A stretch of DNA of 64,000 nucleotides, taken from contig NC_057726.1 of assembly GCF_004010195.1 (NCBI RefSeq), forward strand, positions 69,947,468 through 70,011,467. Reading direction: 5' to 3'. The notes below the pieces were generated by a model that was not told where the DNA came from, ran no database searches, and saw only the letters and a program-made list of their open reading frames with translations. Positions 16,361 to 60,483 of the stretch are shown piece after piece. Source of the DNA: Chiloscyllium plagiosum. Its lineage: Eukaryota. The position numbers and the translations under genes were made by a program. Numbering within the stretch: the first letter of the stretch is position 1; each line of letters opens with the position of its first letter.

Positions 16361-16372
16361 CTTCTTATTCAG

Positions 16373-16489
16373 CTGATAAGGAGAGTGTGTTCAGCCAGTC
16401 CCATGTGTATGGGAATATGGGAGGAGCGGTGATGTTCCTGTTGCTGACCGTAATCACTGGGAGCCACTGTTAGCAAAAGAAGCGCAAAG
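16373..16489 (+). pseudogene. Gene A: decayed transmembrane exon
   Basis: Acceptor ttcttattcag. Phase 1-1, 117 nt: ADKESVFSQSHVYGNMGGAVMFLLLTVITGSHC*QKKRKG, a hydrophobic segment plus a basic stop-transfer cluster. In-frame TAG and a non-GT donor (G|gcaaaa). Confidence 0.6.
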
Positions 16490-16988
16490 GCAAAATAAAA
16501 GTCAGGGGTTCAGTTAGTTACAGAGGGGAAGTCCGGTTGTAACGAAGAAGTGGAATAATTGAGCACAAAGTAACACAGATATAGCATAAAGGTCCTTCTG
16601 AACCTTTCCTTCTTTTTGCTTCAGAGCATTATTGTATTGGACTGTATGTTTGATTCGCTAGATTCTGTTTAAACTTTTGCAGTTTGTTCAACGTAATTAT
16701 CAAGAATTCTGGGCCCCAAACCTGAGCTAGTAGTTATTTTCTTCCGAAGGGGCTCGTTGGCCTCAAACTCGTTGTGCTTTGGAAACTATTTGTGAGAGTT
16801 TTAAATGTGTAGTCATACTGGAGAAAGTTAATGCAGCGTTGGACTCTGTGGGTGATGTTTTATATTTTTAGGACTGCAGCATCTGCGATTCTAATCAACA
16901 CAAATACAAACTTTATGTGGACTGCTAGATTTTTAAAAAAGACTTAATTTAACATACGTGGAGGAATAATAATACCGTTCGTTTCTAG

Positions 16989-17032
16989 GAATGTGGAGAA
17001 GTGCCAAAAATTCCGTGGACAGTGAAGAGATT
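16989..17032 (+). pseudogene. Gene A: candidate cytoplasmic micro-exon
   Basis: gtttctag| ... |gtaatt, phase 1-0, 44 nt (GMWRSAKNSVDSEEI). Phase and size match gene B's 41-nt micro-exon. Confidence 0.35.
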
Positions 17033-17577
17033 GTAATTTGGTGTCATTCACTTTGGCATACTGCAAAAGTGGTTTAAAAAAAGTCAACACTGAAATTGCA
17101 GAATTCACTCATTCTGTTTTAACTCCACTTTGATTACATATTTCACTTTTATATGTTAGTCCCTGAATAATCACATCGACCTGTCATCCTTGCGGGCGCA
17201 AGGGAATCGCAAGCATTTTGAAGAAACAATGTGGTTTCGTTTCTATTTTTAAAATGTCTGCCCTGGAGAGATGAGTATACACATGTCAGACTTCAGCGAT
17301 ATCGTTAGACTGTTGCCCGGCTGATCCTGCTATCAGTTTTGTGAATATGAATGAGCTTTGTATTTATGAGTATGCGTACAGCCTCAATGGGCTAGATTTT
17401 CCCGCTCGAAAGTACATTGACTGTGATCTCATATAAGGAATAGCCACTGGTTGATGTATCAATGCAGTCCAAAAGTTACGTCTCATTAATTTTATTGACC
17501 CCTGAATGTCAGTCAACCTGAAAAGCACTGTGCAAGAATACATTATTACTGGAGTCTGTAATAAACTTGCTCATCTC

Positions 17578-17704
17578 NNNNNNNNNNNNNNNNNNNNNNN
17601 NNNNNNNNNNNNNNNNNNNNNNNNNNNNNNNNNNNNNNNNNNNNNNNNNNNNNNNNNNNNNNNNNNNNNNNNNNNNNNNNNNNNNNNNNNNNNNNNNNNN
17701 NNNN
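17578..17704. other. Assembly gap
   Basis: Run of N. Confidence 1.
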
Positions 17705-17743
17705 TCTGACGTTTACTTCAAAATCTCGAGCACTTTTTACAAG

Positions 17744-17842
17744 GGGGTTCGAATGTGTTTAGTGTTATATGGAGTTCTACTAAGACCAGACTTTCATTGC
17801 AGTAAGCAAGTCCGAGTAGAACTTCGTAAGGTCATGTCCGAC
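17744..17842 (+). pseudogene. Gene A: candidate ITIM exon
   Basis: After the acceptor tttttacaag come 33 codons, GVRMCLVLYGVL...; same length and same G1/Y9/L12 register as gene B exon 38507-38605. No intact donor at the equivalent position. Confidence 0.35.
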
Positions 17843-18270
17843 TGAGAGAACGCGGAATGCAGCAACTGAATAAAAACCGAGAGAACCGACAATGCTGTCA
17901 ATCAGAAACAAAACCAGAAGTTGCTGGAAAGGTTCAGCATATCAGGCAGCATCTGCGGAGAGAAATCAGAGTTAACATTTTGGGTCGAGTGACCCTTCCT
18001 CAGAATGCAGCAACTGAAGTTAATTCAATTTTATTCTGGTTAAAAAAAGGAGCAAATATGGCACTGCAGAGCACAGGCAAAGGTACAGCGCACACCAATC
18101 ATTAATTCAATAGTGGAACAGGCTTGAGGGGCAAATGTTCTTGCTTCCTCGTGCTCGTGAATGGCATTTTAATTTAAATATGTTTTTCTTTTTAAAAATA
18201 GCCCTTGATACGATATGGCACACGGAGAAAAGCAATGAACTGACAGTATTCTCAATCCTTAACTTCATAC

Positions 18271-18459
18271 ATGGAACAATCGGACACTGACGATGAATTA
18301 ACGTCCGCCAGTCTCGATTTGAACGGCACCAGCAAAGTAAGAAACCCGAACATAAACGCCAAGGATCCAGAGTGTGCCGAGCTAAAAGTAGCAGCACCAA
18401 CCGGAGCAACTGAGGCCGTCTGCGGAGAAACCAGCATCTCAGAATGTTGCTCATCTTAG
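18271..18459 (+). pseudogene. Gene A: terminal cytoplasmic exon with signalling tyrosines replaced
   Basis: Aligns without gaps to gene B's last exon: LTSASLDL vs MTYAALDF and KDPECAEL vs KDTEYAQV, 11/40 identities by hand. The upstream intron shares aatgaac...tattctcaa with 38786-38806. The acceptor reads catac instead of catag. Confidence 0.7.
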
Positions 18460-21400
18460 AGGCAGCATTTTAGCGATGTGCATCGATTTCATTTCTTTCT
18501 CGAGTGTGATGCGTCCAGGTCTTAAGAACATCGCATCTTCAGTGATGTTCCTTTCCTGTTACTTCACAAAGAACTGCTGACCAATTGTTCATATTCAATC
18601 GCAAGTTAGGATGACTGTCGGTTTGTGAAAGTGTTTATTAATTAATAAACAATGCTCTTGCTCTACTCTGTTTAAGGCTAATTTCCGCTGCGTTTCTGTT
18701 TAAGGGCGATGATAATGAACACTGAATTAATGGGAGAGTTGCATTTTAGTTCATTTTCCTTACCTAAATTAATCGACGTTTTGTTCTTACCCATTACAAT
18801 TTCTTTCTCGAGTGTGATGCGTCCAGATCTTAAGAACCTCGCGTCTTCAGTGATGTCCCACTGTCTCTGAATATTACATGTGAATATCCCCTTGTTCTCG
18901 AATTTCAAATCGACTTATCTCTAATGTGAACACGTTTTTCTTAATGAACTGCGAATGGTTATGCAGTCATGATGATGTGCCAACATTCTGGAGCTGGTGA
19001 ATTTGTTTTAATCATCTCTTGCAAAGAATTACATTGCATTTTGTAAATTGAACAACCCCCTTTTGAGGAATAGTTGTGGGAAAATTGTTAGCAGTCGCAT
19101 AATTGATCAGAAAAAATGCCAGTCGTCCTGCATGTGTGTTAATCGATCTTCATATCCTGCATTATTTCACTGTAGCAATTCACTGGAGTAATTCACTTTG
19201 TTCTGAGCTAAACTAGTTCAGTATAACCACTAGCGCGAGGCACAAGTCGACTAATATCAGTCCGCCGTCCTGTCAAGATCTTTTTTTGGGGGATATTCAG
19301 TTTAAAACAAAAACACGATGGTGTACAAAAAAAAAATAAAAAAGAACTTACAGTAAGGTCTACCAGGTTTGAGAACTGTCTGCGAAAATGTTATTCCCTC
19401 ACTGTGGAATTCTTTGTTCAGGCCTTGAAATGTATGGACTTCAGTATATTCCGAAAATCTGTGTTCGAAATGTGTTTTACTGATTTTCCAGTTTTTATTA
19501 GTCGCATTTAGTTGTTGATGACAAAAGAACCGTGGTATTTCTAACGTCGGGAGTACCCACACAGCTATTGAGTGTGAAAGAACGGCTGGTCAGATTAGGC
19601 ACTTGGCAAATACAAGTGAACATTTTAATTAACTCTGTAGTGCTGGCATGAGGAAAGAAATATCATTTTCAGCAAATTATCCGGTTTTGTCAAATAAAGA
19701 CTGAGTGCCTACTGTGAGCAAACATGCTATTTTCAAAGTTATGGCAATATCTTACGGATCTCTTACGGATAATGAAGGCCCCAATAAATGCTGGAAGTCA
19801 CAATTGCCAATGTCAATTCTCGGGTGACAGGACATGCAATTTCAAACGTTCGCCTGTAACGGACATGTCTGATCTGGATTCCTGCCTCAGAGCAGCTGAG
19901 ACAATTATCAGCTTCGGCAGTTCAGCCAGACGTCTGTAGATTGTGGTTTATAAAATGCTTCATTGTTTGCTATGCTTTTTTTTATCCCCAAATGGAAATA
20001 AAGATTATTTTTAATTTCAAGGTCTAGGATATATTCGCGTCAGTCATTAAATTGCATCCGCTGATGTCCACTTGTCAAATTTAATTGCAACAAATTTAAA
20101 TAAATAACATTTATTTCTCTCTCGTCATTCGAAAATGCATGCCAGTCTTAAAAATATTCTTACATCTTTCTTTCTAAAGTAGGTGTTATTGCAATAGCTT
20201 GCTTTGGTTTCGTTTTTTGCCATTCCGAAGGCAATATTAGGTGAAGCAATTTAAACATTTGCACATAAACCGTAAGATGCTATCAATCTATTCCATAGAT
20301 CAAATGTTTGAGATTGAACAGCGCGGTTGGCTGTTAACATAACTGACCGTGGCTAGCCGAGATAAAGTGGTGGAACATTTTGTGGTTTAACATTGAGTGC
20401 ATCATTGCCTTAAATACATACTGGCTCATTACGATTCAAGTCAGAGTTGTTCCATTTTCTCTATCTAATGTAAGATCAAAACGAATTAAACTTCGCACCT
20501 CCAGTATGTCACAGCAGGAACTCAGCGATCCAACCTGTGCAGTTATTTTTTATCGAAATGTAACGGCACTTGCGAGATGCATGTTCAGATATGAGGTGCA
20601 AACATAAAAAATATAATGCACAGCCCCGTCCTGATGCCCCTGCCACACTGTTTGACTTAAAATTAATATTCTAAAATTGTCCTTGATAGAGCATCATGGA
20701 GTTCCTCTTGGATGGAAATTGTTTTATTACATGAAATAATGGAGTACAGACGGCCATTTTGATAGCGCTGCGCATCGCTGTGTACTTACTGACATACAAG
20801 CTTAGTTGTTCATTTTAGAGATGTATAATCATTCATGAAATCAAAACTGTATATTCTAGTACTTTTCACCATTGGAAGTTAGCCACAAACGCAAGGAAGG
20901 CAAGAGTTTGCACGAAGAACAACTGAACCAGTGGAATATAGACGGAGCAAAATATACTTTGATGTTAATTTCTTTTTGTCCAGTTAACTCCGTCCTTTAT
21001 TTCGGTACTGGTTATCTGAAAGGGCGGTGCTACTAAGTGCTGAATTCTCAATAATTCTATTTGAATTTCCTTTGTAAGCTGGTATAACCATTGCCACAAA
21101 TGATAGATGCCCATGTGGTTGGTCTGGGAGTCAGGCTTATTTTTTTATTGCCTCTTGACTTCTCTAATAGTTTTCTGAAGGTCATAGCTGGATTTTCCCT
21201 ATAGCCCAGAACTGACCGACTTGTACTGTTCGGACCTGGACTTCAGTATGTAGTGGATCTCCTGGTTCATCCATGATTTCCGGTTCGGAGACCCTCCATA
21301 TCACTAATGAAAAACAGAAAAGTAAGTAGGTTATATTTAGTACACATGGTATTAGTGATGTAATATCTGGCATCATGTGTACAATAGTGCTCTTGTTACT

Positions 21401-22378
21401 TAAGGAAAGATGTAAAGGCTTTGAGACCAGGCCAGAGATGTTTACCTGAATAATATTTCGAAGAAAACCATTGATTTATAAGGATTGGTTGGAGAGAATA
21501 AGTTTAAGCTTCGGAAGAATAAGTCAAATTGACTGAAACATGCAGAATCCAAAGTGGGTCTTGGCAAGGTGCATGTTACCAGAATATTTGCAATCGAGGG
21601 AGATTGCAGAATTAATGGCAGTTGTATAAATGCCATAGTCCTCAGTGTAACACATCGTTGAGGAAAACATCTTATTCTCACACCAAAAAATCAATATCTT
21701 TGCATCGCATCACACTTCCTCGAAGGGCGGGGTAGCAGAATATTTGTTCTTTTTAAAAATGCAACCTAGATAGATGTTTGTCAATCGTGGGGTGGGTGTG
21801 TGGGGTGTGGGGTTTCGCGGTTGGAAATTCACTTACGGTCTTAAAATGCATCGTAGCTTGGCTCAGTTAGGAATATTAAATGCGATTATTTGAAAGAACA
21901 CACTGATGTTTGTGCTGCTCATACAGTCCACACATCCCCAACAGAGGGAAAGACTGGCTTGAATGATCAGCTCGAGCCGTACACAGCAAATGGCTAACTG
22001 TTGCACTGAACTTTAGCAAAATGAACAAGAAAGAGTCATGTTCCTGATCAATGAACCGGATGTTACACTGCACTCTGACACTGTCTATCCAATGTCACTT
22101 TCAAGTTCTTGCAAACTATCAGCCAGTTCACGCTCTGTCTCTCCGGCAAATAGATCAACATGTTCCTGAGTATTGCACTTTTCTGTCTCTTTATTCAGAC
22201 AACAATTTTCCCAGGTATTCTCTCTCTTTCTACAGTACATTGCCTTTCCATAAAGTCGACCTGTTATTTAATCTTATTTAATATATTGTGTACAATTCAC
22301 TTTTGGACAGGTTAAGTCAATTAATGAACTCCACTCATTTAATCTTGCTAGTCTGTTTGTAAATGTCTTTTTCTGTAG

Positions 22379-22699
22379 GTTCTGGGGAAACCTTGGATAA
22401 AGTGACCCAGATACCAGGGAACATGACTAAAACAGTGGGTGAAAATGTGTCCTTCCATTGCTCAATTCCTTTATTTCAAGTCGGCCCAGCTGTCAACGTA
22501 ACCTGGTGGAAGCAAGGTGATCCTCATTCTCTCAATGCAGAACAAGATGACCGAAAAGTAATTGGCCTCCAGACTAAATTCAGTGGATTCCTTCAGATAA
22601 TCAATGTCAGTGTACAGGACAGAGGAATGTACTATTGCACAATCGTCCAACAAGGCAAATTATTTGGAAACGGAAAAGGGTCCAATTTAACAGTGTTGG
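22379..22699 (+). CDS. Gene B exon: Ig V-set domain with germline-joined J-like G strand
   Basis: ttctgtag| and |gtatgt splice sites, phase 1-1, 321 nt open. VTQ, FHC (B-strand Cys), VTWW, LQI, DRGMYYC, then FGNGKGSNLTVL. Five N-X-S/T sequons. Confidence 0.93.
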
Positions 22700-23514
22700 G
22701 TATGTATGAAAGCAAAATTTAAGCAATAGAGACAAGTAATATTTCACATTTGAAATAATTCTCGGGTGTGCTTGGGAAAGTTCACATTACAGGATTTATT
22801 AAAATGTATTTGATGTTATATGTCTTCAATGGCAAGTTAACATTTTTGTCCAACCCTAATTATCCTTGAACGGAGTCAATTCTTGATCAATTGGGAGAAT
22901 TGTTGAGAGTCAGCAACGTTGCTGTATGTTTTGAGTGATATAGTGTCCAAGCAGGTCCGAATGGCAGGTGGTGTGCGTGTGCTCCTTGGAGACATCTCCA
23001 TAGTTCCTGATACATGCCCACATTTAAGTTGCATCGCTGACTGCTGTACTTCATGTTCAGTATTTCAATAGTTTAGAATGATGTATCAGCAGTTGTACCT
23101 GAATTATACAGCCGTGGGACATAAACAGGAATCTCATGTACTATTGCAATATGATGAAAAGATACATGCTCTGATCAAGGGTCATCCCAAACGTTAACTT
23201 GCTTTCTCTCCATGGATGCTGCCTGACTGGCTGTGATCGCCAGCATTTGTTGCTTTCAGTACAGATTCCAGTATCTGAAGTAATTTGCTCCGACATTTCA
23301 ATGATATTGGTTAAGAGCAATAGCCCATTGCAAGCGACACAGATTTAATTATTTATTTTTAACATCTTCTTCACTCAAAGTTGACAGTTGAGAAAAAGGT
23401 TCCCTGGTGCATAAGATTTAACCCTGGTTTTTCACTGCCAGACCTGTTGAGTTTCTCCAGCAATTTCTGTTTATTTTTGTTGATGACGTTTCTTGACTGG
23501 CTTATTTTTAAGTG

Positions 23515-23812
23515 AAAGTGAGGATTGGATATGCTGGAGGCTAGAATCCAGAGTGTGGATTCTGGAAAAGCACAGCAGGTCAGGCAGCATCCGAGGAGCA
23601 GGAGAGTGGAAAAGCACAGCAGGCCAGGCAGTATCCGAGGAGCAGGAGACTGGAAAACCACAGCAGGACCGACAGTATCCGAGGGGCAGGAGACTGGAAA
23701 ATCACAGCAGGTCAGGCAACATTCTTGATGAAGGGCTTTTGCCTGAAACGTCGATTTTCGTGCTCCTCGGATGCTGCCTGACCTGCTCTGCTTTTCCATC
23801 ACCACACTCCGG
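23515..23812. repeat. Penelope pLTR-derived insert with about 4 x 44-bp tandem units and an inverted arm
   Basis: Units tggaaaagcacagcaggtcaggcagcatccgagg.gcaggagac followed by a degenerate hammerhead core and a reverse-complement arm. Confidence 0.8.
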
Positions 23813-24356
23813 GCTCATTTTATGCCGGTGTGATTTTAACAGGTAAATATTAAAATGTTGAAAGCTGATATTGCTAAAACCTAAGAACTGCTGGAGCAAC
23901 CGCCCAGGACACTCCATATGTTTTTGCTTTGCAATAAGTAAGTCACTACGTTGACTTGCGTGTCTGTTATGAATCAGTTATTTTTCCCCTCTGTCCCCTC
24001 TACATAACTGTCGTTTTCACCGTTGCTTTGTTGAACCACCGGCGATAGCAAATCATGAATCCAATTCCAGAGCCTATCGATAGTTATTTCCAGCTGAAAA
24101 ACTGAGATCTGTAACAACAGAAGTTCACGTTTTCTTGCCCACGCTTTGTCCGGGGATGAGTTAATATTCCCGCTGATACTGCACTATGTTCGCATCTCGG
24201 CACCAACAGCGCACATTGTCCAACCCTCACCACAGTGAGCACCTCCCCCACAACTGGACAGTAACTGTCCAGCAATGGGCCGAAACAAAAGATTGGGCTG
24301 TAATCCTCGTTTGACGTGAAGGTAACTTTATTTTTTCTTCCTGTTCACTTCCCTAG

Positions 24357-24668
24357 TTCCACCGACTCCACTGAATATTCTCTCTCAGCAGCCTGGAAAT
24401 GATCCATCCGTGACTCTTGCTGTTTTATGCTCCACATCTCCCTTTTACCCGAGGGATATCAGTTTTACTTGGTACAAAGATGGCAGTAAAACTACAACAG
24501 GAATCAGTACAGTCATTCGAGCAACAGACGACAGACTACACGAAGCATACAGCTGGTTGGAAGAAACACAGGCAATCCGAGCCGGAACTGTTTATACCTG
24601 CATGGTATCCCACAGCACCCTCCAAAGTTCAGCTGCGGTCAGTCACATCGTAACGAATGGCAGCCCGG
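24357..24668 (+). CDS. Gene B exon: Ig C1-set domain
   Basis: ttccctag| and |gtaaga, phase 1-1, 312 nt open. VLC.TSPFYPRDISFTWYKDG ... YTCMVSHSTL are C1-set signatures. Confidence 0.93.
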
Positions 24669-25344
24669 GTAAGAATTCTACTGGAACCATATCATTAATA
24701 ACGCACATCAAATCTGTGATACATGGAATTATACCGCACGGAAACAGACCCTTAGGTCCAACCAGTCCATGCCAAACCTCATCCCAAACTAAACTTGTTC
24801 CACCCGCCTGCTCCTGGTCCGTAATCCTGGCAAACCTTTCCCATATATGTACTTACCTAAATGTGTTTTAAACCATGTAATTGTCCCCATATCCATCACT
24901 TCCTCAGGAAGTTCATTCCACATGCAAACCGAACTCTGTGTAAAAACATTGGCCCTCATGCCTTTTTAGAAGGTCTCTCCTCTCACCTTAAACATGTGTC
25001 CCTAGTCTTGAAATTACCCATCCTAGGGAAAAGACAATGACCCTTCACCGTATCTGTACCCCTCATTATTTTATAAACTTGTATTGGGTCACCTCTCAAC
25101 CTCCTAATCTCCAGGGAAACAAGTCCCAACCTTGTATGTTTTACTTGCTAGAACCATGTAGTGTGCTCTTTATAATCATAAATGTGTTCTATTCAAGAAA
25201 ATATTCAATATTTTTGTTGACATTTTCCAGGCAAATTCTTTGAATTTGCACAGAAAATTAGAATTCACCTGGAGAAGATTACGTTTATTTTCTCTTTCTT
25301 GAAAATATCATAAATATATACTTTTTTGCAACAATAGCTAGGAC

Positions 25345-27705: not shown

Positions 27706-27874
27706 TTGAATTGGATTGAATTTATTGTCACATCTACTGAGGCACAGTGAAAAGCTTTGTCTTGCGAGCAGTAAAGTCAGATCACATAGCTAAGTAGTAT
27801 AGATAGTAAATAATAGGTAAGCAGCAGCAAAAATAAAAACACAGGTACAGGCGAATGTTAAGAGTTTGTGGCAT

Positions 27875-27982
27875 GAGAGAATGTGCAAACTCCACACAGA
27901 CAGTCACTCGAGGCTGGAATCAAACCCGAACGCCTGGCGCTGTGAGGCCTTAATGCTAACCACTGAGAAACCATGCTGCCCT
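27875..27982 (-). mobile_element. HE1/V-SINE 5' fragment
   Basis: Matches the tRNA-derived head of the SINE at 59055-59360. Confidence 0.75.
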
Positions 27983-33314: not shown

Positions 33315-33425
33315 ACTGTGTGTCCACAAAGTATTTGATGATTTCTGCAACTGTATCAGCTGGATTGATATTATTGGTGCTCAGCCTCATCATGGTGAAG
33401 CGATACACAGCAAACAAAAATATGG
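33315..33425 (+). CDS. Gene B exon: connecting peptide + uncharged transmembrane helix
   Basis: ttgttttag| and |gtagga, phase 1-1, 111 nt: DCVSTKYLMISATVSAGLILLVLSLIMVKRYTANKNM. In frame with the C1 exon. Confidence 0.85.
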
Positions 33426-35819: not shown

Positions 35820-35860
35820 TGAAAACCAATGATGACAAATCGAGTAATGATGAACACAAG
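35820..35860 (+). CDS. Gene B exon: cytoplasmic micro-exon with GC donor
   Basis: Pyrimidine-rich acceptor ending gattag|. 41 nt, phase 1-0, VKTNDDKSSNDEHK. Donor AAG|gcaagt is the GC-AG consensus. Supplies exactly the phase change needed between the TM and ITIM exons. Confidence 0.7.
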
Positions 35861-38506: not shown

Positions 38507-38605
38507 GGAACAACTGATGCGATGACACCTTATGATGCACTAAATCTGAACAATTTGCAGAAGGCACCAAGACCAAGGCATCAAGAAATGGTAGCATATG
38601 CCCAG
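38507..38605 (+). CDS. Gene B exon: first tyrosine-motif cytoplasmic exon (acceptor non-canonical)
   Basis: 99 nt, phase 0-0: GTTDAMTPYDALNLNNLQKAPRPRHQEMVAYAQ. Donor CAG|gtaggg. A strong T-tract lies upstream, but the acceptor reads ccg instead of cag. Confidence 0.65.
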
Positions 38606-38820
38606 GTAGGGGAAAGACTCAGAACACAATGACACCATATAGCAGTAATTAAGAATCTATTAGAGCTCAGTGTATGAAATGCCTACAATTCTACTTTTTA
38701 AAAATCTGTTGCACTTGCACTAATTCATTGCGACACTGTCTATTTTTATTGTTTAACCTAACACCTGAATCCAAGTGACTAAAAAATGAACCAATGATAT
38801 TCTCAAAATTGTTTTCACAG

Positions 38821-38964
38821 ACCAGGACAAGACCTCAGGATCATAAAATGACCTATGCTGCTTTAGACTTCTCAGCCCCCAGGAAAACAGAGAAAACAAA
38901 TTATAAGGAAAAGGATACAGAGTATGCTCAGGTTCACTTGGAAAAACAAAGACAAGCTTTGTGA
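38821..38964 (+). CDS. Gene B exon: terminal cytoplasmic exon with ITIM-like MTYAAL and ITSM TEYAQV
   Basis: gttttcacag|, phase 0: TRTRPQDHKMTYAALDFSAPRKTEKTNYKEKDTEYAQVHLEKQRQAL*. Confidence 0.85.
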   Translation, partial: TRTRPQDHKMTYAALDFSAPRKTEKTNYKEKDTEYAQVHLEKQRQAL

Positions 38965-39039
38965 TAAATGCAATGAAAAGTCTGTTAATGCCAAGGCATT
39001 TTTGATTGTTGTATGTCTTGAACAAAATGTCCATTAGAA

Positions 39040-50787: not shown

Positions 50788-51510
50788 GCTGAAAATGTGT
50801 TGCTGGAAATGCGCAGCAGGTCAGGCAGCATCCAGGGAACAGGAGAATCGACATTTTGGGCATTAGCCCTTCTTCAGGAATGAGGAAAGTGTGTCCAGCA
50901 GGCTAAGATAAAAGGTAGGGAGGAGGGACTTGGGGGAGGTGCGTTGGAAATGCGATAGGTGGTTTGGAGTAAGTTGAGGGTGATAGGCCGGAGTGGGGTG
51001 GGGGCGGAGAGGTCAGGAAGAAGATTGCAGGTTAGGAAGGNNNNNNNNNNNNNNNNNNNNNNNNNNNNNNNNNNNNNNNNNNNNNNNNNNNNNNNNNNNN
51101 NNNNNNNNNNNNNNNNNNNNNNNNNNNNNNNNNNNNNNNNNNNNNNNNNNNNNNNNNNNNNNNNNNNNNNNNNNNNNNNNNNNNNNNNNNNNNNNNNNNN
51201 NNNNNNNNNNNNNNNNNNNNNNNNNNNNNNNNNNNNNNNNNNNNNNNNNNNNNNNNNNNNNNNNNNNNNNNNNNNNNNNNNNNNNNNNNNNNNNNNNNNN
51301 NNNNNNNNNNNNNNNNNNNNNNNNNNNNNNNNNNNNNNNNNNNNNNGATAGGGGAGGGGAGGGAAATATATCCTTGGTGGTGGGGTCAGTTTGGAGGTGG
51401 CGGAAATGATGGCGGATGATACGCTGTACATGGAGGTTGGTGGGGTGGTAGGTGAGGACCAGTGGGGTTCTGTCCTGGTGGCGGTTGGAGGGGCGGGGCT
51501 CAAGGGCGGT
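50788..51510 (-). mobile_element. Penelope-like element fragment (contains an N gap at 51041-51346)
   Basis: DRTPLVLTYHPTNL...HFRHLQTDPTT motif and a pLTR like 63390-63640. Confidence 0.85.
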
Positions 51511-51832: not shown

Positions 51833-53651
51833 GTCGGTGACACACATAGCATGATCTTTCTTTGTTACCGAGATGATGGTGGTCTTCTTGAAGCAGGTGG
51901 GAACTTCAGATCTCAGTAAGTAGAGGTTAAACATTTCTGTGTATACTCCTGCCTGCTAGTCTGCACTGGATCTGAATGCATGGTCAGGGATTCCGACAGG
52001 AGGTGGAGAAGTCAACTTTTCCAGTACAATCCTCTCTCAGGAATGGAGGTAGTGGTAGGGAGAGCTGCGGATAAACCAGATGGGGAAAGGGTTCTGGGTG
52101 GAGAGAGGGGCGGAATGATGAGTTAGTGATAGGTGAATACAGGTGGTGGATATGACCTGTTTGGTCAATGGGAGGAGTGGACCGATCGAACATCTGCTGC
52201 AGTGACTGTGGGAGCAGGTGCATCTGCGGCGGTTGCGATAGGTGACATGGTTTCAGTAACCTTCTGTTCAAAGTGACCACAGAATGCATTGAGATCATTG
52301 AGAAGGAATGTGGTGTTGCCTGCAATTCTATTTGCCTTTCCTTTGGAAGCTGGTGCAAGCCTTGACATAAACAATGGATGTCTGTGTGGTTGGTCGGGGT
52401 GTCAAGCTTAGTTTTTTATTGCCTCTTGACATCTCTGATGGCCTTCTGAAGGTCATAGTTGGATTTTCCCGATAGTCCAGAGCTGTCGGACTTGTATTGC
52501 TCTGACCTGAAACTCAATATGGAGTGTTTCTCCCGGATCATCCATGATTTCCGGTTGGGAGACCCTCCAGATCACTCATGAAAAACAGCAAAGTAAGGAG
52601 GTTATATTTAGTACACATGGCATTACTGAGTTAATATCTGGCATCATGTGTACAATAGTGCTCTTGTTAATTAAGGAAAGATGTAAAGGCTTTGACAGCC
52701 AGGACAGAGATGGTTTACCAGAATAATATTTCGAAGAGACCCATTGATTTATAAGGATTGGTTGGAAAGTCTAGGCTAAGCCTTTAGAAGAATAAGTCAA
52801 ATTGACTGAAACATATAGAATCCAAAGTGGGTCTTAGCAAGGTTCATGTTATCAGAATGTTTACAATTGGGGGAGGTTGGAGAATTAATGGCAGTTTCAT
52901 AAATGTGAAGACTCCTTCATGTAACACATCGTTGAGGAGAACATCTTATTCTCACACCAAAAGACTAATATCTTTCCATCAAATGTCCTTCAAAGGCGGG
53001 GAAGCAGAGTATTTGATTTTTTTTTCAAGTGCAAACTCGACAAAGATTTGTTCAGATTGGGGTGCTTGGGAGTTGGGGGCGGGGGGTGGAATTTTTCTGA
53101 CGGTCCTTAAATTCATCGTTGCTTCGCTCAGTTAGGAATATTAAATGTGATTCTTTGAAATAGCACACTGGTATTTGTTCTTCTCATACAGTCCACATAT
53201 CCCCTACAGAGGGAAAGACTGGCTTGAATGATCAGCTCGAGCCGTACACAGCGAATGACAAACTATTGCACTGAACTTCAGCAAAAGGAACAAAGAATCA
53301 GGTTCCAGATCAATGAACCGCATGTTACGTTGCACTATGACAGTGTCTGTCCAAGTCTTTCAAGTTCTTGCAAACTATCAGCCAGTTCATGCTCTGTCTC
53401 TCCGGCAAATACATCAACATGTTCCTGAGTATTGCACTTTTCTGTCTCTTTATTCTGACACCAATTTTTCCAGGTATTCTCTCTCTTTCTACAGTATATT
53501 GCCTTTCTGTAAAGTCGACCTGTTATTTAATATTTATTTAATATATCGTGCACTGTTCTCATTTGGACATATTAAGTCAATTACTGAACTCCACTCTTTT
53601 AACTCTTTTATATAATCTTGCTAATTTGTTTGTGAATGTCTCTTTCTGTAG

Positions 53652-53964
53652 GTTCTGGGGTAATCTTGGTCAACGTGACCCAATTTCCCGGGAGCGTGAC
53701 TGAAACTGTGGATGCAAATGTGTCCTTCCATTGCTTGATTCCTTTATTTCTAGTCGGCCACGCTGTTAAGGTGGAAGCAAGGTGATCCTCATTATCTACA
53801 CGCGGAACAAGATGACCAAAAAGTAACTGGCCACAAAAATAAATACAGTGGCTTCCTTCAGATAATCAATGTCAGTGTACAGGACAGAGGAATGCACTAT
53901 TGTACAATCGTCCAACAAGGCAAATTGATTGGAAACAGAGCAGGATCCAATTTAACAGTGTGGG
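53652..53964 (+). pseudogene. Gene C: VJ exon with 8-nt deletion (frameshift)
   Basis: Paralogue of 22379-22699, 313 vs 321 nt. Loss of cgtaacct just before the C-strand Trp gives an early TGA. YYC changed to HYC. Splice sites retained. Confidence 0.9.
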
Positions 53965-54810
53965 GTATGCATGAAAGCAAAAGGTAAGCGATTCTCGGGT
54001 GTGCTTGGAAAGGTTCACATTACAGGATTTATTAAAAATGTATTTGATATTGTATGTTCTTCAATGAGAAGTTAACATTTTTGTCCAACCGCAATTATCC
54101 TTGAACTGAGTGGTTTCCTTGGTCAGTTGGGAGAGTTGTTGAGAGTCAGCAACGTTGCTGTATGTGTTGAGTTGCATAGTGTCCAAGCAGGTCCGAATGG
54201 TAGGCAGTGTGCGTGCGCTCCTTGGAGACATCTCCACAGTTCCCGATACATGCCCACATTTAAGTTGCATTGCTGACTGCTGTACTTTATGTTCAGTGTT
54301 TCAATACGTTAGAATGATGTATCAGCAGTTGTACCTGAATTATGCAGCCGTGAGACATAAACAGGAATCTCAAGTACTATTGCAATATGAAGAAAAGATA
54401 CATGGCCTGATCAAGGGTCATCCAAATGTTTCCTTGCTTTCTCTCCGTGGGTGCTGCCTGACCCGCTGTGATCGCCAGCATTTGTTGCTTTCAGTACAGA
54501 TTCCAGTATCTGGAGTAATTTGCTCCGAAATTGCAATGATATTGGTTCAGAGCAATAGCCCGTCGCGGGCGAAACAGATTTGATCATATTTGATGATTTA
54601 TTTTTTACATCCCCTTTACTTAAAGTTTGTAGTTGAGAACAAGTTTCCCTGGTGCCCAAGTTTTAACCTTTTTCACAGTTGCTGCCAGACCTGTTGAGTT
54701 TCTCCTGCAATTTCTGTTTATTTTTGTTGATGACGTTTCTTGACGGGCTTAACTTTTTAGGCGAAAGTGAGGATTGCAGATGCTAGAGGCTAGAATCAAG
54801 AGTGTGGTGC

Positions 54811-55280
54811 TGGAAAAGCACAGCAGGTCAGGCAGCATCCGAGAGGCAGGAGACTGGAAATGTACCGCAGGTCAGGCAGTATCCGAGGAGCAGGAATCTG
54901 GAAAAGCACAGCAGGTCAGGCAGCATCCGAGGGGCAGGAGATTGGAAAAGCACAGCAGTTCAGGCAGCATCCGAGGAGCAGGAGACTAGAAAAGCACAGC
55001 ACGTCAGGCAGCATCCGAGGGGCAGGAGACTGGAAAAGCACAGCAGGTCAGGCAGTATCCGAGGAGCAGGAATCTGGAAAAGCACAGCAGGTCAGGCAGC
55101 ATCCGAAGGGCAGGAGATTGGAAAAGCACAGCACGTTAGGCATCATCCGAGGGGCAGGAGACTGGAAAAGCACAGCAAGTCAGGCAGTATCCGAGGGGCA
55201 AGAGACTGCAAAAGCACAGCAGGTCAGGCAGTATCCGAGGGGCAGGAGACTGGAAAAGCACAGCAGGTCAGGCAGAATTC
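54811..55280. repeat. About 11 x 44-bp Penelope pLTR-derived minisatellite
   Basis: Expanded orthologue of the roughly 4-unit array at about 23563-23720. Confidence 0.9.
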
Positions 55281-55907
55281 CTGATGAAGGACTTTTACCC
55301 GAAACGTCGAAGATCCGGCACCTCGATTTCTGCCTGACCTGCTCTGCTTTTCCAGGACCACACTCCGAAATCATTATTTTTTTCGGTGTGATTTTAATAG
55401 GTAAATATTAAAATTTTGAAAGCTGAAATTTCTAAAATCTAAAAACTGCTGGAGCCACCATCCTGTACATTCCACATGCTTTTGCCTTGCAATAAGTAAG
55501 TGACTACGTTGGCTTCCGTGTCAGTTATGGATCAGTTAATTTCTTCCTCTGTTGTTATATCACTTTGTGTTGAAAATATGCCGTTATCACTGCTGCCTTA
55601 TTGCACCACCGGCGATAATAAATTATGAATCCAATTCAGGAGCCTCTCGACAGAGAAAAACTGAGATCTGTAACAACAGCGGTCCACGTTTCCTTGCCAG
55701 CGCTTTGTCCGGGGATGAGTTAGTATTCCCATTGATACTGTACTATGTTCGCACCAACAGGGCGCATTGTCCAACCATCACCACCATGAGCACTTTCCCC
55801 CAGAACTGGATAGTAACTGTCCAGTAATGGGCTGAAACAAAGGTTTGGGCTGTAATCGTCTTCTGATGTTGAGGTCACTTTCTTTTTCTTCCTGTTCACT
55901 TCCCGAG

Positions 55908-56219
55908 TTCCACCGACTCCACTGAATATTCTCTCTCAGCAGCCCGGAAAAGATCCATCCGTAAGTCTTGCTGTTTTATGCTCCACATCTCCCTTTTACC
56001 CGAGGGATATCAGTTTTACTTGGAACAAAGATGGCAGTAAAACTACAATAGGAATCATTACAGTCATTCGAACAACAGACGACAGATTGTACGAAGCATC
56101 GAGCTGGTTGGAAGAAACGCAGGTAATCCGAGCCGGAAATGTTTACAGCTGCATGGTATCCCACAGCACCCTCCAAAGTTCAGCTGCGGTCAGTCACATC
56201 GTAATGAAGGACAACCCGG
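55908..56219 (+). pseudogene. Gene C: C1-set exon (open frame, weak GAG acceptor)
   Basis: 312 nt, 22 substitutions relative to gene B's C1 exon (hand count). Donor G|gtaaga. Confidence 0.88.
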
Positions 56220-57394
56220 GTAAGAATTCTACTGGAACCATATCATTAATAATGCACATCAAATCTGTGATACATATAATCATACTGCACGGAAACAGAC
56301 CCTTAATCTAACCGGTCCATGCCGAAAATAATCCCAAACTAAACTATTCCCATCCGCCAGCTCTTGTCCGTAATCCGGCCAAACTTTTCCCATTTATGTA
56401 CTAATCCAAATGTGTTTTAAACGTTGTAATAGTCCCCACATCCATAACTTCCTCAGGAAGTTCATTCCACATGCGAAGCAACTTCGTTGTAAAAATATTG
56501 CCCCCATGCCTTTTTTAAAATCTCTCTCTTCTCACCTTAAAAATGTGCGCCCCTAGTTTTGAAATCGCCCATTCTAGGGAAAATATAACGACCCTTCACC
56601 GTATCTGTACCCCTCAGTATTTTATGAACTTCTATCAGGTCACCTCTCAACCTCCTCATCTCCAGGGAAAGAAGTCCCAACCTTGTCCGCTTTAGAATCC
56701 TACTGGAACCATGTCAATAATAATGCACACTGAGACCGGGATCCAAGAACCGTTTCATTGCTGGTGCTGGGTGGTTTGGACCCTTACCGCAATTTGTTAT
56801 TAATAATTCAAGAAAATATTCAATGTCTGTTGTCCACATATTCTATGCAAACTCTTCATTTTTTCTAGAATCCGTGTGTAGAGTTTTATGGGTTTTCTCT
56901 CCTTTTTGCCCTGAGAATATTGTAAACATACGCTTTTAGACGACATATGCGGTCTTTAGATGAAGAGTTCCAGTTTGATTTTCGAGTACACTAACCTACC
57001 TCCGCTATCATATTAAAACCCGAACTTCTGCAATCTCCCTAAATCCTGAAGGCGTGCATTCATGGAAATGTTCTCTGTATCTTGCTCACGGTCTTGAGAC
57101 ATGATTGGCAAACCCTATTGGCCAGAATTAAGTTTAATACTGCAATCGTGATATTCAATCGTTTCATGTAAATCTGCTTTTATTGTTCAATATAATTGCC
57201 ACCGAGTACATCACAATAGCACCCTATCATCTTGCTGTTTTAATACTCGGCATCTCCTTTTTACCCAAGGAATATAATTTTGACTTGGTACAAAGAAAGC
57301 AGAAAAACTACACCAGAACTAAACAGTTATTCAAACAATGGACGATAGACTATACAATGCAGAGACAGCTGAATATGCATCTTGACGTTTGTTT

Positions 57395-57648
57395 GATTAG
57401 ATTAGACTACATTCTCTCCAGTGTGGAAACAGGCCCTTCGGCTCAACAAGTCCACACCGACCCTCCGAAGAGTAACCGCCCAGACCCATTTCCCTCAGAC
57501 TAATGCACCTAACACTATGGGCAATCTAGCATGGCCATTAACCTAACTTGTGCATCTTTGGACTGTGGGAGGAAACCGCAGCACCCGGAGGAAACCCACG
57601 GAGACACGGGGAGAATGTGCAAACTCCAGTCAGACAGTTGCCCGAGGT
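57395..57648 (-). mobile_element. HE1/V-SINE, 5'-truncated
   Basis: V-domain match. Confidence 0.85.
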
Positions 57649-58309
57649 TCTACCTTATTGCCTCAGAATAATGCATTTAGAATTTATTGCCTCTCCCAGT
57701 TGTTTCGCCAAAATGTGCAGTCCATCCGCAATTTGCAATCAACAGCACGTGGGTTTTATAATTTTAAGTGTCCACCTGTGTGTGGCTTTAACATCAGCTC
57801 CAGCACTCCGCACAATCGACCACTACACGGTCATCACTATATATTTTTTCATCCATGAACCTCGAAATTGACTCGCAATATTCAAGTTAAAGTCGTTTAC
57901 AAAGTAATTCAGTGAAGATTTTATCATCAGAGTCCTGAAGGACCCAATAAGAAATTACCATTTGTAAATATATTGCTCAATTTTGAGTTAAGAGTATAGT
58001 CTGTGGGTGCGCTGACTAGACAGGCTTTTCATAACACACCCAAAGAGATTGTTACGTACTTTTTAAAGCACTTTGGAACCGCGGGCACTGAAGTTGTGAT
58101 AAATTAAAAACTAGGGTGACTAAACTTATCTGTCATGCAGTCATTCTTAGATCCACAAACTCCACAGAAGACAAAATGTCAGCTACCTGAAAATGATAGA
58201 CTAACATGCTTGGTTGACATTCGTTGGTCACAAATTCGAGGCTGTGTAAAAAACAATTTCATTTATGTTCTATGTTCCTAAAATACTTTTAGATTAGAAT
58301 CAATCTAAA

Positions 58310-58690
58310 CATCATGGCATAGACAGAGACCACAGGGGGCGAACACCTTCAACATATTGTCTAGCTATCACCATTGTTAACAGCTAACCCGAGAATGCAA
58401 CTTTTTTAAAAAGGTTTCGTGATTTACACGTTAAAGAAGTGAAACTATCACTGTATTCTAACAGATGAAAGGCTTAACAGACAATCAATTTTTCAATGTA
58501 TAATTTCAGTTACATCACACTGTAAATTTTTGCTATAAATCCTGTGTGTTAGGATTGAGCCCTCCACTACCCCCGATGAAGGAGCGACGTTCCGAAAGCT
58601 AGTGTGCTTCCAATTAAACCTGTGGACGATAACCTGGTGTTGTGAGATATTTAACTTTGTACATCTCCGTCCAACACCGGCATCTCCAAA
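58310..58690 (+). mobile_element. Second Penelope-like pLTR family fragment
   Basis: gatgaaggagcgacgttccgaaagctagtg hammerhead-like core. Related copies at 58915-59440 and 60970-61710. Confidence 0.6.
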
Positions 58691-59054
58691 CAATTTTGTT
58701 TCTGTTTGCATGCCTGACAAAAACATTGAGCACCTTGAAAATACAATTAATCCAAGGAGCATTGGCGTTTGATTATTATCCCTGAATCCAAAACGATGCC
58801 CACCGTAGCATTATTAAAAATACTCATTTCTACCACCAATATCATTTCGCCAGTCCAGCCTGATCATTCACCTTTATTTCATTGACCATACGGCGTACTG
58901 CTTTATGGTGGCTTTTATGATGTGGAGGTGTCGGTGATGGACCAAGTGGACAAGTCAGAAGGTCAGAAGTCACATGACACCAGGTTACTGTCCGTCAAGT
59001 TTAATTGAAATTACAAGCTTTGGCGACCCTGCTCCTTCACAGTTTACCTGCGAA

Positions 59055-59360
59055 TTAGATTACTTACAGTGTGGAAGCAGGCCCTTCGGCCCAACAAGTC
59101 CACACCGCCCCGCCGAAGCGCAACCCACCCATACCCCTACATTTACCCCTTACCTAACACTACGGGCAATTTAGCATGGCCAATTCACCTAACCTGCACA
59201 TCTTTGGACTGTGGGAGGAAACCGGAGCACCCGGAGGAAACCCACGCAGACACGGGGAGAACGTGCAAACTCCACACAGTCAGTCGCCTGAGGCGGGAAT
59301 TGAACCCAGGTCTCTGGCGCTGTGAGGCAGCAGTGCTAACCACTGTGCCACCGTGCCGCC
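59055..59360 (-). mobile_element. Full-length HE1/V-SINE
   Basis: tRNA head with A box (TGGCACAGTGG) and B box (GGTTCAATTCC), V-domain and LINE-like tail. Inserted into a pLTR fragment. Confidence 0.92.
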
Positions 59361-60382
59361 CGCGAAGTGGCGGTGCTTCAAAAGCTTGTGATTTCAAATA
59401 AACCTGTTGGACTGTAACCTGGTGTCGTGTGACTTCAGACCTGATGGTATTTAGTTGACACAATTGTCACTTTTATCCCGATGTTCTTTTGAAAATCAAT
59501 TCTCAGCCTAACCTCCACTCTAAAGAAAGGAATATGTTTCAAATGTTCAACCAAATCGATACAGAGAAAATAAATAATAATTTTAAAAACCCTCGATAAA
59601 CAATACTTTTTAGTGGATGTATTAATTGTGCAAGGAATATACAATTACAGAATTCTTACATTCTATTTAGAACCTGCTTGTAAGCATTTTCTTATTTTTC
59701 CCATGTAAAATAAATTATTCTGGAGCAGGCATATTGGTCAAATTCATGAGGAGATATATCGAAAACAAGCAAGCAGGTATTTCATAAAAGCCAAAAGAAC
59801 TGCAGTCACTGCTTAGCAGGTCTTGCAACATCAGTCGAGAGAAATCAGAACCAAGGAAGGGTCACTGAACCCAAAACGTAAATTCTGAGGTTTCTCCACC
59901 GATGCTGCCAGACCTGCTTAGCATTTCCAGCAATTTCTGTTTTTGAAGCAAAAATTACACTTTGTGAAATCAAAACTTCCAATAATTACACGAGAAAATT
60001 GATGTTGTATGATGGCGCGATTACATTAAAGAGCCATTGTATTTTACGCTTGAGTTATATTTTACTTCGATTGATAGAAAATGGAGCAATTTCTGTGAGC
60101 AATTTGCTGAATTCATGTGGAATAGTTGTGGTGTATTCTTAAATTTCATAGTGCAATTTATTCTACTTTAATATGAGGAATACAAGCCAGAGAACACAGA
60201 TAAATGTTTAACTCTGTGAATTCCAGGTTTATATTTTCGATGTTTATGGTTTTGCAGTTAGTGACTTAAGGAACAATTTATTTCAATCTTAATATTTAAT
60301 AGTGAATTAAATGGTTTCATAGAATTTGTTCGAGCATTTTATCGATAATAGTTTAATGACTCTTCTAAATGTTCCATTTTAG

Positions 60383-60483
60383 TCCACAGGTTCATAATTC
60401 CTTCGATTCGGTGTCTTATATTATGATGCTTCATGATTCTTGTTCTGACAATTATCATTATTGACTATTTCAAAAGCCTTTAA
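60383..60483 (+). pseudogene. Gene C: Arg-containing transmembrane/terminal exon with a nonsense codon
   Basis: gttccattttag|, phase 1 (matches the C1 exon): VHRFIIPSIRCLIL*CFMILVLTIIIIDYFKSL*. Confidence 0.6.

What the first reader, a model, noticed from the sequence alone, without database searches (positions are those of the whole stretch)
16373..60483. Tandem cluster of paired inhibitory/activating non-rearranging VJ-C1 receptors undergoing birth and death
Seen: three same-strand gene units. A is a decayed TM + ITIM-type tail. B is VJ-C1, neutral TM and ITIM/ITSM tail. C is a close paralogue of B's VJ-C1 followed by an Arg-TM with a tail of a few residues. Established: similar ectodomains coupled to either ITIM tails or charged TMs define paired immune receptors (SIRP-alpha/beta, KIR, LILR, fish NITR). 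Inference: this is a shark paired-receptor family built on an antigen-receptor-like VJ-C1 ectodomain, possibly uncharacterised. Most TM and tail exons are invisible to ORF-based annotation.
Basis: partly seen in the sequence, partly recalled or inferred. Interest (0 to 1): 0.92.

Follow-up and report, generated by a model that had tools for sequence, protein, structure and literature searches.

The report
Shark SIRP-like receptor genes, mostly decayed
This stretch of bamboo-shark DNA holds one already-annotated SIRP-like immune receptor gene flanked by two broken relatives, one of them a dead "activating" partner, so it is a real but largely ordinary piece of a shark-wide receptor family.

Summary
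The three same-strand units are real, but two are broken.

- **Gene B** is the public Chiloscyllium plagiosum protein named [quoted passage not shown], that is, SIRP-alpha-like. Its leader, V(J), C1, TM and a fifth exon map 100% to the window.
- **B's tail.** The two four-tyrosine tail exons are open and collinear with mammalian SIRP-alpha tails. The first has CG where the splice acceptor AG should be. The public model stops before them, and the RNA runs laid showed no reads on these exons.
- **Unit C** copies B's leader-V-C1 (84-93% nt). Its V exon has an 8-bp deletion that shifts the frame. That exon is still homologous to intact Arg-TM, short-tail exons of other sharks, so C is a dead activating-type gene.
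- **Unit A** is a 3' relic: a stop in the TM exon and both tail tyrosines replaced.
- **The family** gave 51 of 51 hits in cartilaginous fish, under inconsistent automatic names, with both inhibitory and Arg-TM members. I found no paper on it.
- **Verdict:** new members of a known kind, of moderate interest. First-stage notes of this scan flag similar units in other windows of this genome.

The parts
16387..16509 (+). Unit A: relic of a neutral transmembrane exon with an in-frame TAG at 16471-16473, followed by a basic stop-transfer stretch
   Evidence: tblastn to P0051 (16387-16485, 42% id, E 6e-4), P0170 (E 0.003) and P0162 C-terminus (16423-16509, E 0.033). The stop is seen.
18271..18459 (+). 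Unit A: relic of the last (tyrosine-pair) tail exon. The frame is open, both tyrosines are replaced (Tyr to Ser, Tyr to Cys), and TG stands where gene B's corresponding tail exon has its acceptor AG.
   Evidence: tblastn to P0051 (40% over 57 aa, E 2.8e-8), P0172 (E 7e-5) and P0169 (E 0.003). Sequence.
22160..22214 (+). Gene B exon 1: signal peptide, phase-1 donor GT
   Evidence: 100% match to the start of P0166. DNA.
22379..22699 (+). Gene B exon 2: V-set domain with a J-like G-x-G motif in the same exon, directly followed by a splice donor, so it is non-rearranging
   Evidence: Pfam V-set 7e-10. PDB best matches are Ig lambda V-J. 100% match to P0166. DNA.
24357..24668 (+). Gene B exon 3: C1-set domain
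   Evidence: Pfam C1-set 1e-11. PDB hits: UrIg2 2e-16, SIRP-alpha 1e-11, SIRP-gamma 3e-9. 100% match to P0166.
33315..33425 (+). Gene B exon 4: stalk plus uncharged transmembrane helix plus basic anchor
   Evidence: 100% match to P0166. 50% identity to Heterodontus P0152 TM, E 1e-4. Acceptor AG and donor GT seen.
35820..35860 (+). Gene B exon 5: 41-nt juxtamembrane exon whose donor is GCAAGT. The public model reads on into the intron to a stop at about 35896.
   Evidence: 100% match to P0166. DNA.
38507..38605 (+). Gene B exon 6: first tyrosine pair (TPYDAL ... VAYAQV). The ORF is intact, but the acceptor dinucleotide is CG (38505-38506).
   Evidence: tblastn to P0152 52% id, E 3.5e-9. Hit by 9 of 43 family queries. 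DNA. Not part of P0166.
38821..38964 (+). Gene B exon 7: second tyrosine pair (MTYAAL ... TEYAQV) and the stop codon. Acceptor AG is intact, phase 0.
   Evidence: tblastn to P0152 47% id, E 4e-8. Hit by 13 of 43 queries. Local alignment to the bovine-type SIRP-alpha tail scores 48, reached by 0 of 2000 shuffles.
53419..53473 (+). Unit C exon 1: signal-peptide exon, open, 52 of 55 nt identical to B's
   Evidence: Hit by 2 of 43 queries.
53652..53964 (+). Unit C pseudo-V exon: an 8-bp deletion across the conserved Trp region causes a frameshift and premature stops. The J-like motif is degraded (Phe to Ile, Gly to Arg).
   Evidence: B/C DNA alignment. Translation. tblastn splits over two frames.
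55908..56219 (+). Unit C C1 exon: open, 290 of 312 nt identical to B's
   Evidence: Pfam C1-set 5e-11.
57230..57371 (+). Unit C: truncated, frameshifted fragment of a second C1 exon
   Evidence: blastn 78% to B 24415-24555. tblastn in two frames. Hit by 12 of 43 queries.
60383..60483 (+). Unit C: relic of an activating-type TM exon. It has a phase-1 acceptor AG, an intramembrane Arg and a short tail, and is interrupted by an in-frame TGA at 60424-60426.
   Evidence: Best window-wide ungapped match of the Carcharodon P0033 TM exon (score 50, 0 of 300 shuffles) and of Heterodontus P0040 (score 40, 6 of 300). tblastn E 0.009 and 0.033. The stop is seen.

Best explanation
The window is part of a tandem cluster of SIRP-like receptor genes in the whitespotted bamboo shark. 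Each gene encodes a signal peptide, one V domain with a built-in J-like strand (so no rearrangement is needed), one C1 domain, and a transmembrane exon.

- **Gene B** is the one gene here that is not visibly broken, and it is already in RefSeq. Its genome also holds two tail exons with four tyrosines arranged as in SIRP-alpha. If they are spliced in and phosphorylated, they would recruit SHP-type phosphatases and inhibit the cell. The first tail exon has lost its acceptor AG. B may therefore make a tail-less protein, as the public model says, or skip to the last exon in frame and keep one tyrosine pair.
- **Unit C** arose when B's 5' half (promoter region to about 490 bp past C1) was duplicated next to an activating-type 3' end. 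That end has an Arg in the membrane helix and a short tail, the design that pairs with DAP12-like adaptors. C is now dead: an 8-bp deletion in V and a stop inside the TM exon.
- **Unit A** is the 3' remnant of another inhibitory member: a stop in the TM exon and both tail tyrosines lost.

Shown: exon anatomy, identity with the public protein, the lesions, and the homologies. Inferred: ligand binding, SHP recruitment, adaptor pairing, and the order of events.
For: - **Gene B.** P0166 (C. plagiosum, named SIRP-alpha-like) maps at 100% to five exons.
- **Tails.** Tail exons are homologous to other sharks' tails. They are collinear with the mammalian SIRP-alpha tail over all four tyrosines: P0152, P0015 and P0072 score 78-81, each reached by 0 of 1000 shuffles, and B exon 7 is reached by 0 of 2000.
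- **PDB.** The family profile against PDB puts SIRP-alpha (1.7e-32, V+C1 contiguous) and SIRP-gamma (5e-28) among the best, beside UrIg2 and Ig chains.
- **B/C duplication.** 84.5% nt overall, with ends at 25159 and 56714.
- **Lesions in C.**
- **C's TM exon.** It matches intact Arg-TM exons of P0033 and P0040 above shuffles, and P0320 carries the same exon.
- **Paired design.** Heterodontus P0040 (Arg-TM, short tail) and Heptranchias P0172 (neutral TM, tyrosine tail) share 180 of 228 ectodomain residues, and the similarity ends at the end of C1.
- **Unit A.** Homologous to P0051.
Against: - **No RNA evidence.** In one search, none of three RNA or possibly-RNA runs gave reads on any B exon in 33300-39299. 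Only about 2% and 6% of the two raw-read runs were read, and the tissue is unknown.
- **Lesions unchecked.** The lesions in C and the CG acceptor of B rest on one assembly. I could not check them against DNA reads.
- **Weak points in the TM-exon homology.** It is short and hydrophobic. One of three queries (P0102) found nothing there (137 of 300 shuffles did as well). The small HMM gave only i-E 0.097.
- **The V domain is not SIRP-like on its own.** Its best solved matches are Ig lambda, not SIRP.
- **Orthology untested.** Synteny with tetrapod SIRP could not be tested.
- **C's end is uncertain.** C's true TM and tail could lie beyond the window end. B's TM lies 8.6 kb after its C1, which for C would be past 64000.
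Confidence: 0.8

Rival explanations
1. One reading: B is a working ITIM/ITSM inhibitory receptor and C is a working activating partner with an Arg-TM. The apparent lesions are assembly errors or one individual's null alleles.
For: C's leader and C1 exons are open, and all C splice sites that I inspected are intact. The C TM exon has a good phase-1 acceptor. B's tail ORFs are intact.
Against: Three independent defects would all have to be errors: an 8-bp deletion in complex sequence, a TGA in the TM exon and a CG acceptor. C's J-like motif is also degraded. B-versus-C dN/dS is 0.47 (V) and 0.63 (C1), and the V exon is no more conserved than the introns (86.3% against 87-89%). The public model of B lacks the tail.
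Confidence: 0.06
2. The exon at 60383-60483 is not a receptor exon at all. It is a chance hydrophobic reading of AT-rich DNA, and unit C is simply a 5' gene fragment with no 3' end in the window.
For: The tblastn E-values are only 0.009 and 0.033 within a 64-kb search, and several queries were tried. P0102 does not match. The reading has a stop in it.
Against: Two separate queries from different shark orders, and a small HMM built from them plus P0102, each give their best window-wide hit at this one spot. That spot is on the right strand, downstream of C's C1, and starts exactly at a phase-1 acceptor. 0 of 300 and 6 of 300 shuffles reach the scores. The Arg aligns with the Arg.
Confidence: 0.1
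3. The family is not SIRP kin. It is a cartilaginous-fish lineage of antigen-receptor-like V(J)-C1 genes, nearer to UrIg, Ig light chains or TCR, and its tyrosine tail converged on the SIRP-alpha pattern.
For: The V exon's best solved matches are Ig lambda chains (4e-8). The C1 exon's best match is UrIg2. Automatic names include 'immunoglobulin lambda-1 light chain-like' and 'TCR beta chain-like'. Short tyrosine motifs can converge.
Against: The tail matches the SIRP-alpha tail collinearly over four motifs with similar spacing. SIRP-alpha gives one contiguous V+C1 match to the family profile. UrIg2 has a VJ domain plus nine or more C domains and other expression (PMC12227049, section 7). Sturgeon and yak SIRP-beta-like proteins are among the two non-cartilaginous proteins I identified among the V-exon hits I named.
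Confidence: 0.15

Closest known systems
Mammalian SIRP family (SIRP-alpha / SHPS-1 / PTPNS1, and SIRP-beta)
   Same: N-terminal V domain with a J-like strand in one exon, C1-set domain, and a single TM. The tail has four tyrosines in two pairs, collinear with bovine-type SIRP-alpha. Sister members have a basic residue in the TM and a very short tail. RefSeq already names gene B SIRP-alpha-like.
   Different: One C1 domain instead of two. The activating form uses Arg near the outer third of the helix, with no sequence likeness to the Lys-containing SIRP-beta TM that I noticed (visual comparison). The family is large and clustered in cartilaginous fish. Ligand, adaptor and orthology are untested.
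UrIg / UrIg2 (non-rearranging shark VJ-C genes; PMC12227049)
   Same: Germline-joined VJ exon with a split leader, and C1-type domains. It is the best solved match of B's C1 exon (9dmx).
   Different: Nurse-shark UrIg2 has nine C domains and no SIRP-type tyrosine tail is described for it (section 7 read; 'ITIM' and 'SIRP' occur 0 times in the text). The genes here have one C1 and a TM.
Other paired receptor families (KIR, LILR, teleost NITR)
   Same: Near-identical ectodomains are coupled either to ITIM-type tails or to a charged TM with a short tail. Evolution is by tandem birth and death (recalled knowledge for those families; shown here).
   Different: Those families use C2/I-type or V-only ectodomains rather than V(J)-C1 (recalled, not tested here).
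Ig lambda light chains / TCR chains
   Same: V-J-C1 order. They are the best solved sequence matches of B's V exon.
   Different: No recombination signal gap: V and J-like parts are one exon ending in a splice donor. The protein is membrane-anchored with its own signalling tail.

Membership tests
SIRP family | N-terminal V-set domain with a J-like G-x-G strand encoded in the same exon | tested here: met
   Pfam V-set. The J-like motif aligns to the Ig lambda J region with a 2-residue insertion. It is a single exon ending in a donor. The glycines are invariant or nearly invariant in 31 family members.
SIRP family | Membrane-proximal C1-set domains (two in mammalian SIRP-alpha) | tested here: inconclusive
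   One C1-set domain is present and matches SIRP-alpha d2/d3 and SIRP-gamma. Only one C1 per gene is found in B and in 31 of 31 aligned members. A skate model (P0002) has a tandem repeat of it.
SIRP family | Cytoplasmic tail with four tyrosines in two pairs that bind SHP-1/SHP-2 | tested here: inconclusive
   At sequence level this is met: there is a collinear match to the SIRP-alpha tail. In gene B, splicing of the tail exons is not shown: the acceptor is CG, the exons are absent from P0166, and there is no RNA coverage. Phosphatase binding is not testable here.
SIRP family | Orthology / conserved synteny with the tetrapod SIRP locus; CD47 as ligand | not testable with these tools
Paired activating/inhibitory receptors | Closely similar ectodomains joined to either an ITIM-type tail or a TM with a basic residue and a short tail | tested here: met
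   At family level, P0040 and P0172 share 79% of the ectodomain with opposite 3' modules, and intact Arg-TM members exist (P0033, P0320, P0040, P0102). In the window, B and C share 84-93% nt in the ectodomain exons but have different TM exons. The activating copy is dead.
Paired activating/inhibitory receptors | The activating member associates with an ITAM adaptor through the TM charge | not testable with these tools
   Inference from the Arg in the helix only.
Rearranging antigen receptors (Ig/TCR) | Separate V and J segments flanked by recombination signal sequences | tested here: not met
   The V and J-like parts are contiguous in one germline exon (22379-22699), which is followed by GT and is identical in the public protein.
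UrIg / UrIg2 | VJ domain followed by several C domains (nine in nurse-shark UrIg2) | tested here: not met
   B has a single C1 exon between V and TM. The paper's description is in section 7.

The most novel reading that the evidence does not exclude
These genes belong to a family found across cartilaginous fish, in holocephalans, sharks and rays. It would be an undescribed, single-C1 ancestral form of the SIRP family that already worked as inhibitory/activating pairs. Its germline-joined V(J)-C1 ectodomain would be one more surviving relative of the antigen-receptor precursor, beside UrIg and NKp30. Here the birth of an activating/inhibitory pair by duplication of a 5' half onto a different 3' end can be seen directly.
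Probability: 0.4. Interest if true: 0.6.

Novelty: new member of a known kind. Interest (0 to 1): 0.4.

Why it matters
V(J)-C1 genes that do not rearrange are discussed as remnants of the precursor of antibodies and T-cell receptors (PMC10751288, passages read). A large, clustered SIRP-like V(J)-C1 family with both inhibitory and Arg-TM members in the oldest jawed vertebrates would have two consequences:

- It would push the paired-receptor design of SIRP back to the base of the gnathostomes.
- It would add candidates to that discussion of antigen-receptor precursors.

This particular window adds little function. It holds one gene that is already annotated and two pseudogenes. It does give a clean example of how such pairs are made and lost.

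Tried and rejected
- **Hydropathy scans** of the + strand found B's TM but many false hydrophobic ORFs, so I used homology instead.
- **Pfam on B's TM exon:** no family.
- **UrIg/UrIg2 membership:** rejected on domain number.
- **P0102 as a third witness** for C's TM exon: no match (137 of 300 shuffles as good).
- **Search with the TM part of P0033 alone**: only 2 candidates, itself and Cetorhinus P0320, because of the word index. It says nothing about other species.
- **Orthology of Hemiscyllium P0164 to B or to C:** mixed signal (C1 91% against 83%; V C-terminal half 81% against 84%), so undecided.
- **dN/dS of B against C** (0.47 and 0.63): compatible with decay or with diversifying selection, so not decisive.
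- **Reads**: no listed holder is on record as RNA. On 33300-39299 only repeats at about 34700-35100, 36300-37300 and 39100-39299 were covered in the RNA or possibly-RNA runs, so there is no test of splicing. The DNA-like run X2 listed no difference at the CG acceptor, but its coverage of that base is not shown.
- **ESM Atlas**: generic V-C1 look-alikes (Ig kappa-like, SIRP-alpha fragment, TAPBPL), which adds nothing firm.
- **Literature.** Searches found no paper describing this shark family. PMC4451681 and PMC8236899 (passages read) mention SIRP only in other contexts. Subscription papers, for example the J Immunol papers cited in PMC10751288, and supplementary files were not seen and may bear on novelty.
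- **Domain trees** with SIRP, UrIg, Ig, TCR and NKp30 were not built, because I held no Ig, TCR, UrIg or NKp30 sequences as records.

Full report
**Layout and gaps.** The window has three N runs: 14373-14504, 17578-17704 and 51041-51346. A tblastn of 43 family proteins against the whole window finds family exons only on the + strand. They fall in three groups: 16387-18441 (unit A), 22160-38973 (gene B) and 53419-57361 (unit C). Three further one-query hits (11042, 26086, 39463) come from the reverse-transcriptase-like N-terminus of one gene model; one search shows this for 11042 (P0040), and I infer it for the other two. No family exon touches a gap. The first gap lies between A's two relic exons. 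The second lies 2.07 kb before C's leader. ORFs that run across the gaps are X-translations only. Continuity across the gaps cannot be judged, and I did not try to fill them.

**Gene B is a known gene.** The V exon alone, scored against 1.84 billion representatives, gave 395 proteins at E up to 1e-3. The best single-domain hits are V-C1-TM proteins of cartilaginous fish. A search with the Heterodontus relative P0152 returned 51 proteins at E up to 1e-5, and all 51 are from sharks, rays or the elephant fish. The tool only sees relatives that share exact words, so this says nothing about bony vertebrates. One hit, P0166, is the Chiloscyllium plagiosum RefSeq protein 'tyrosine-protein phosphatase non-receptor type substrate 1-like'. 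Its peptides map at 100% to five exons:

| Exon | Coordinates | Content |
|---|---|---|
| 1 | 22160-22214 | leader |
| 2 | 22379-22699 | V(J) |
| 3 | 24357-24668 | C1 |
| 4 | 33315-33425 | TM |
| 5 | 35820-35860 | juxtamembrane |

All Ig exons are phase 1-1 with AG/GT sites. V and the J-like strand are one exon followed by a donor, so the gene does not rearrange.

**B's tail.** P0166 does not splice after exon 5. It reads into the intron and stops. The exon 5 donor is GCAAGT.
- 38507-38605 carries TPYDAL and VAYAQV.
- 38821-38964 carries MTYAAL and TEYAQV, then the stop.
- They match the Heterodontus tail (52% and 47% identity, E 3.5e-9 and 4e-8).
- The Hemiscyllium relative P0164 joins exon 5 to exon 6.

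In the window, CG stands where the exon 6 acceptor AG should be, and no AG lies between the pyrimidine tract and the exon. Exon 5 ends in phase 0 and exon 7 starts in phase 0, so skipping exon 6 would stay in frame and keep one tyrosine pair. Heterodontus P0160 and others have exactly that form.

I laid 33300-39299 on one possible RNA assembly, two single-cell RNA runs and one DNA-like run. No RNA read fell on any exon. Only repeats were covered, and only about 2% and 6% of the raw runs were read. Expression and splicing therefore remain untested.

**Unit C.** B 21053-25159 and C 52324-56714 are a segmental duplication of about 84.5% identity. By part:

| Part | Identity B vs C |
|---|---|
| Leader exon | 52/55 |
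| Intron 1 | 89.0% |
| V exon | 270/313 |
| Intron 2 | 87.3% |
| C1 exon | 290/312 |

- C's V exon lacks 8 bp across the conserved Trp region, which shifts the frame and brings stops. Its J-like motif has lost the Phe and one Gly.
- C1 is open.
- A truncated, frameshifted second C1 fragment lies at 57230-57371.
- Homology with B ends about 490 bp after C1.

The exon is nevertheless not noise:
- The TM exon of the great white shark protein P0033 aligns to 60382-60474 without gaps, Arg on Arg. This is its best place in all six frames: score 50, shuffles mean 28.8, and 0 of 300 reach it.
- Heterodontus P0040 also peaks there (6 of 300).
- S. canicula P0102 does not (137 of 300).
- The basking shark P0320 has the same exon.

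I read C as a dead activating-type gene. Its own inhibitory-type exons, if any, could lie beyond the window end.

**Unit A.** 16387-16509 matches neutral TM exons (P0051, 42%, E 6e-4) but has a TAG at 16471-16473. 18271-18441 matches the single-pair tail of P0051 (40% over 57 residues, E 2.8e-8), with both tyrosines replaced. TG stands where gene B's corresponding tail exon has its acceptor AG. No V or C1 exon lies upstream in the window. A is a 3' relic of another subfamily.

**What the family is.** B's V exon is V-set and its C1 exon is C1-set. Among solved structures:
- The V exon is nearest to Ig lambda (4e-8).
- The C1 exon is nearest to UrIg2 (2e-16 over three domains), then SIRP-alpha (1e-11) and SIRP-gamma.
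- A profile of 31 members puts IgA1 heavy chain, UrIg2, SIRP-alpha (1.7e-32, one contiguous V+C1 match) and SIRP-gamma at the top.

The tails align collinearly with a bovine-type SIRP-alpha tail over all four tyrosine motifs: scores 78-81 against shuffle means of about 30, with 0 of 1000 reaching them. B's exon 7 alone scores 48, with 0 of 2000. Exon 6 alone is weak (52 of 2000). Of the V-exon hits whose names I looked up, the two non-cartilaginous ones are sturgeon and yak SIRP-beta-like proteins. The family is therefore SIRP-like in architecture and tail, with one C1 instead of two. Orthology is untested.

Automatic names are inconsistent: SIRP-alpha-like, SIRP-beta-like, Ig lambda-like, tapasin-related, NCR3LG1-like, CD276, MHC II beta-like and TCR beta-like. 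This shows that nobody has curated the family.

**Paired design.** I sorted 59 family proteins by TM and tail.
- Most have a neutral TM and a long tail with TYAxL/EYAxL-type motifs.
- A minority have an Arg in the helix and a short tail. Among the latter, P0033, P0040 and P0102 share a conserved exon type.
- Heterodontus P0040 (Arg-TM) and Heptranchias P0172 (tyrosine tail) share 180 of 228 ectodomain residues, and the likeness stops at the end of C1.

That is the signature of paired receptors. Caveat: these are gene models, and P0040's N-terminus is transposon-derived.

**Novelty.** Eight full-text searches found no description of this family. The shark non-rearranging VJ genes discussed in the papers I read are UrIg, UrIg2 and NKp30. 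Subscription journals and supplements were not visible. Because RefSeq already labels gene B and its relatives as SIRP-like, I rate this as new members of a known kind. First-stage notes of this scan report further units before and after the window, and a cluster 593 kb upstream. I did not test those.

**Limits.** Whole-protein comparisons used public proteins returned by the tools.

Noticed in passing
window 36300-37300 (intron 5 of gene B): A very high-copy repeat. Summed contig depth reaches about 774,000 in the DNA-like run X2 and thousands in X1. Single-cell RNA reads carry long T runs at 36406-36411, so copies of this element somewhere in the genome are transcribed and polyadenylated.
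   Followed up: no
window 23487-23846 and 54802-55411; also about 4272-4486, 27144-27365, 50796-50882, 61876-62000, 63399-63483: A dispersed repeat whose core is a tandem array. In one search the same B segment matches C at about 54893, 54943, 54986, 55030 and 55119. It sits in intron 2 of both B and C and is expanded in C (393 gap columns in the intron alignment). It gives long spurious ORFs.
   Followed up: partly
window 57425-57870 and 59069-59401; also 28377-28720, 30247-30312, 43949-44074: A SINE-like element whose translation (ORF 57550-57858) resembles the C-terminus of the catshark isoform P0001. This suggests that in another shark a copy has been exonised as an alternative, TM-less end of a family member.
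   Followed up: no
window 35861-35866: The exon 5 donor of gene B is GCAAGT, not GT. Together with the CG at the next acceptor, intron 5 has two non-canonical ends in this assembly.
   Followed up: partly
window 38435-38586: One contig of the DNA-like run X2 (depth 15, 11 differences in 328 nt) jumps from 38435 to 38586. This skips 150 nt that include the start of exon 6. It is either a diverged paralogue or a haplotype with that part deleted or replaced (table 5).
   Followed up: no
window 38606-38632: The reading frame runs on past the exon 6 donor for nine codons to a stop. The Hemiscyllium protein P0164 ends with the corresponding read-through peptide. This suggests a conserved alternative end with only the first tyrosine pair.
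   Followed up: no
window 9384-10951, 13318-13875, 15957-16361, 25512-26512, 47983-49493: Fragments of LINE-type endonuclease and reverse-transcriptase ORFs on both strands fill much of the space between the receptor units. One of them matches the N-terminus of the Heterodontus gene model P0040, which therefore looks mis-joined at its 5' end.
   Followed up: partly
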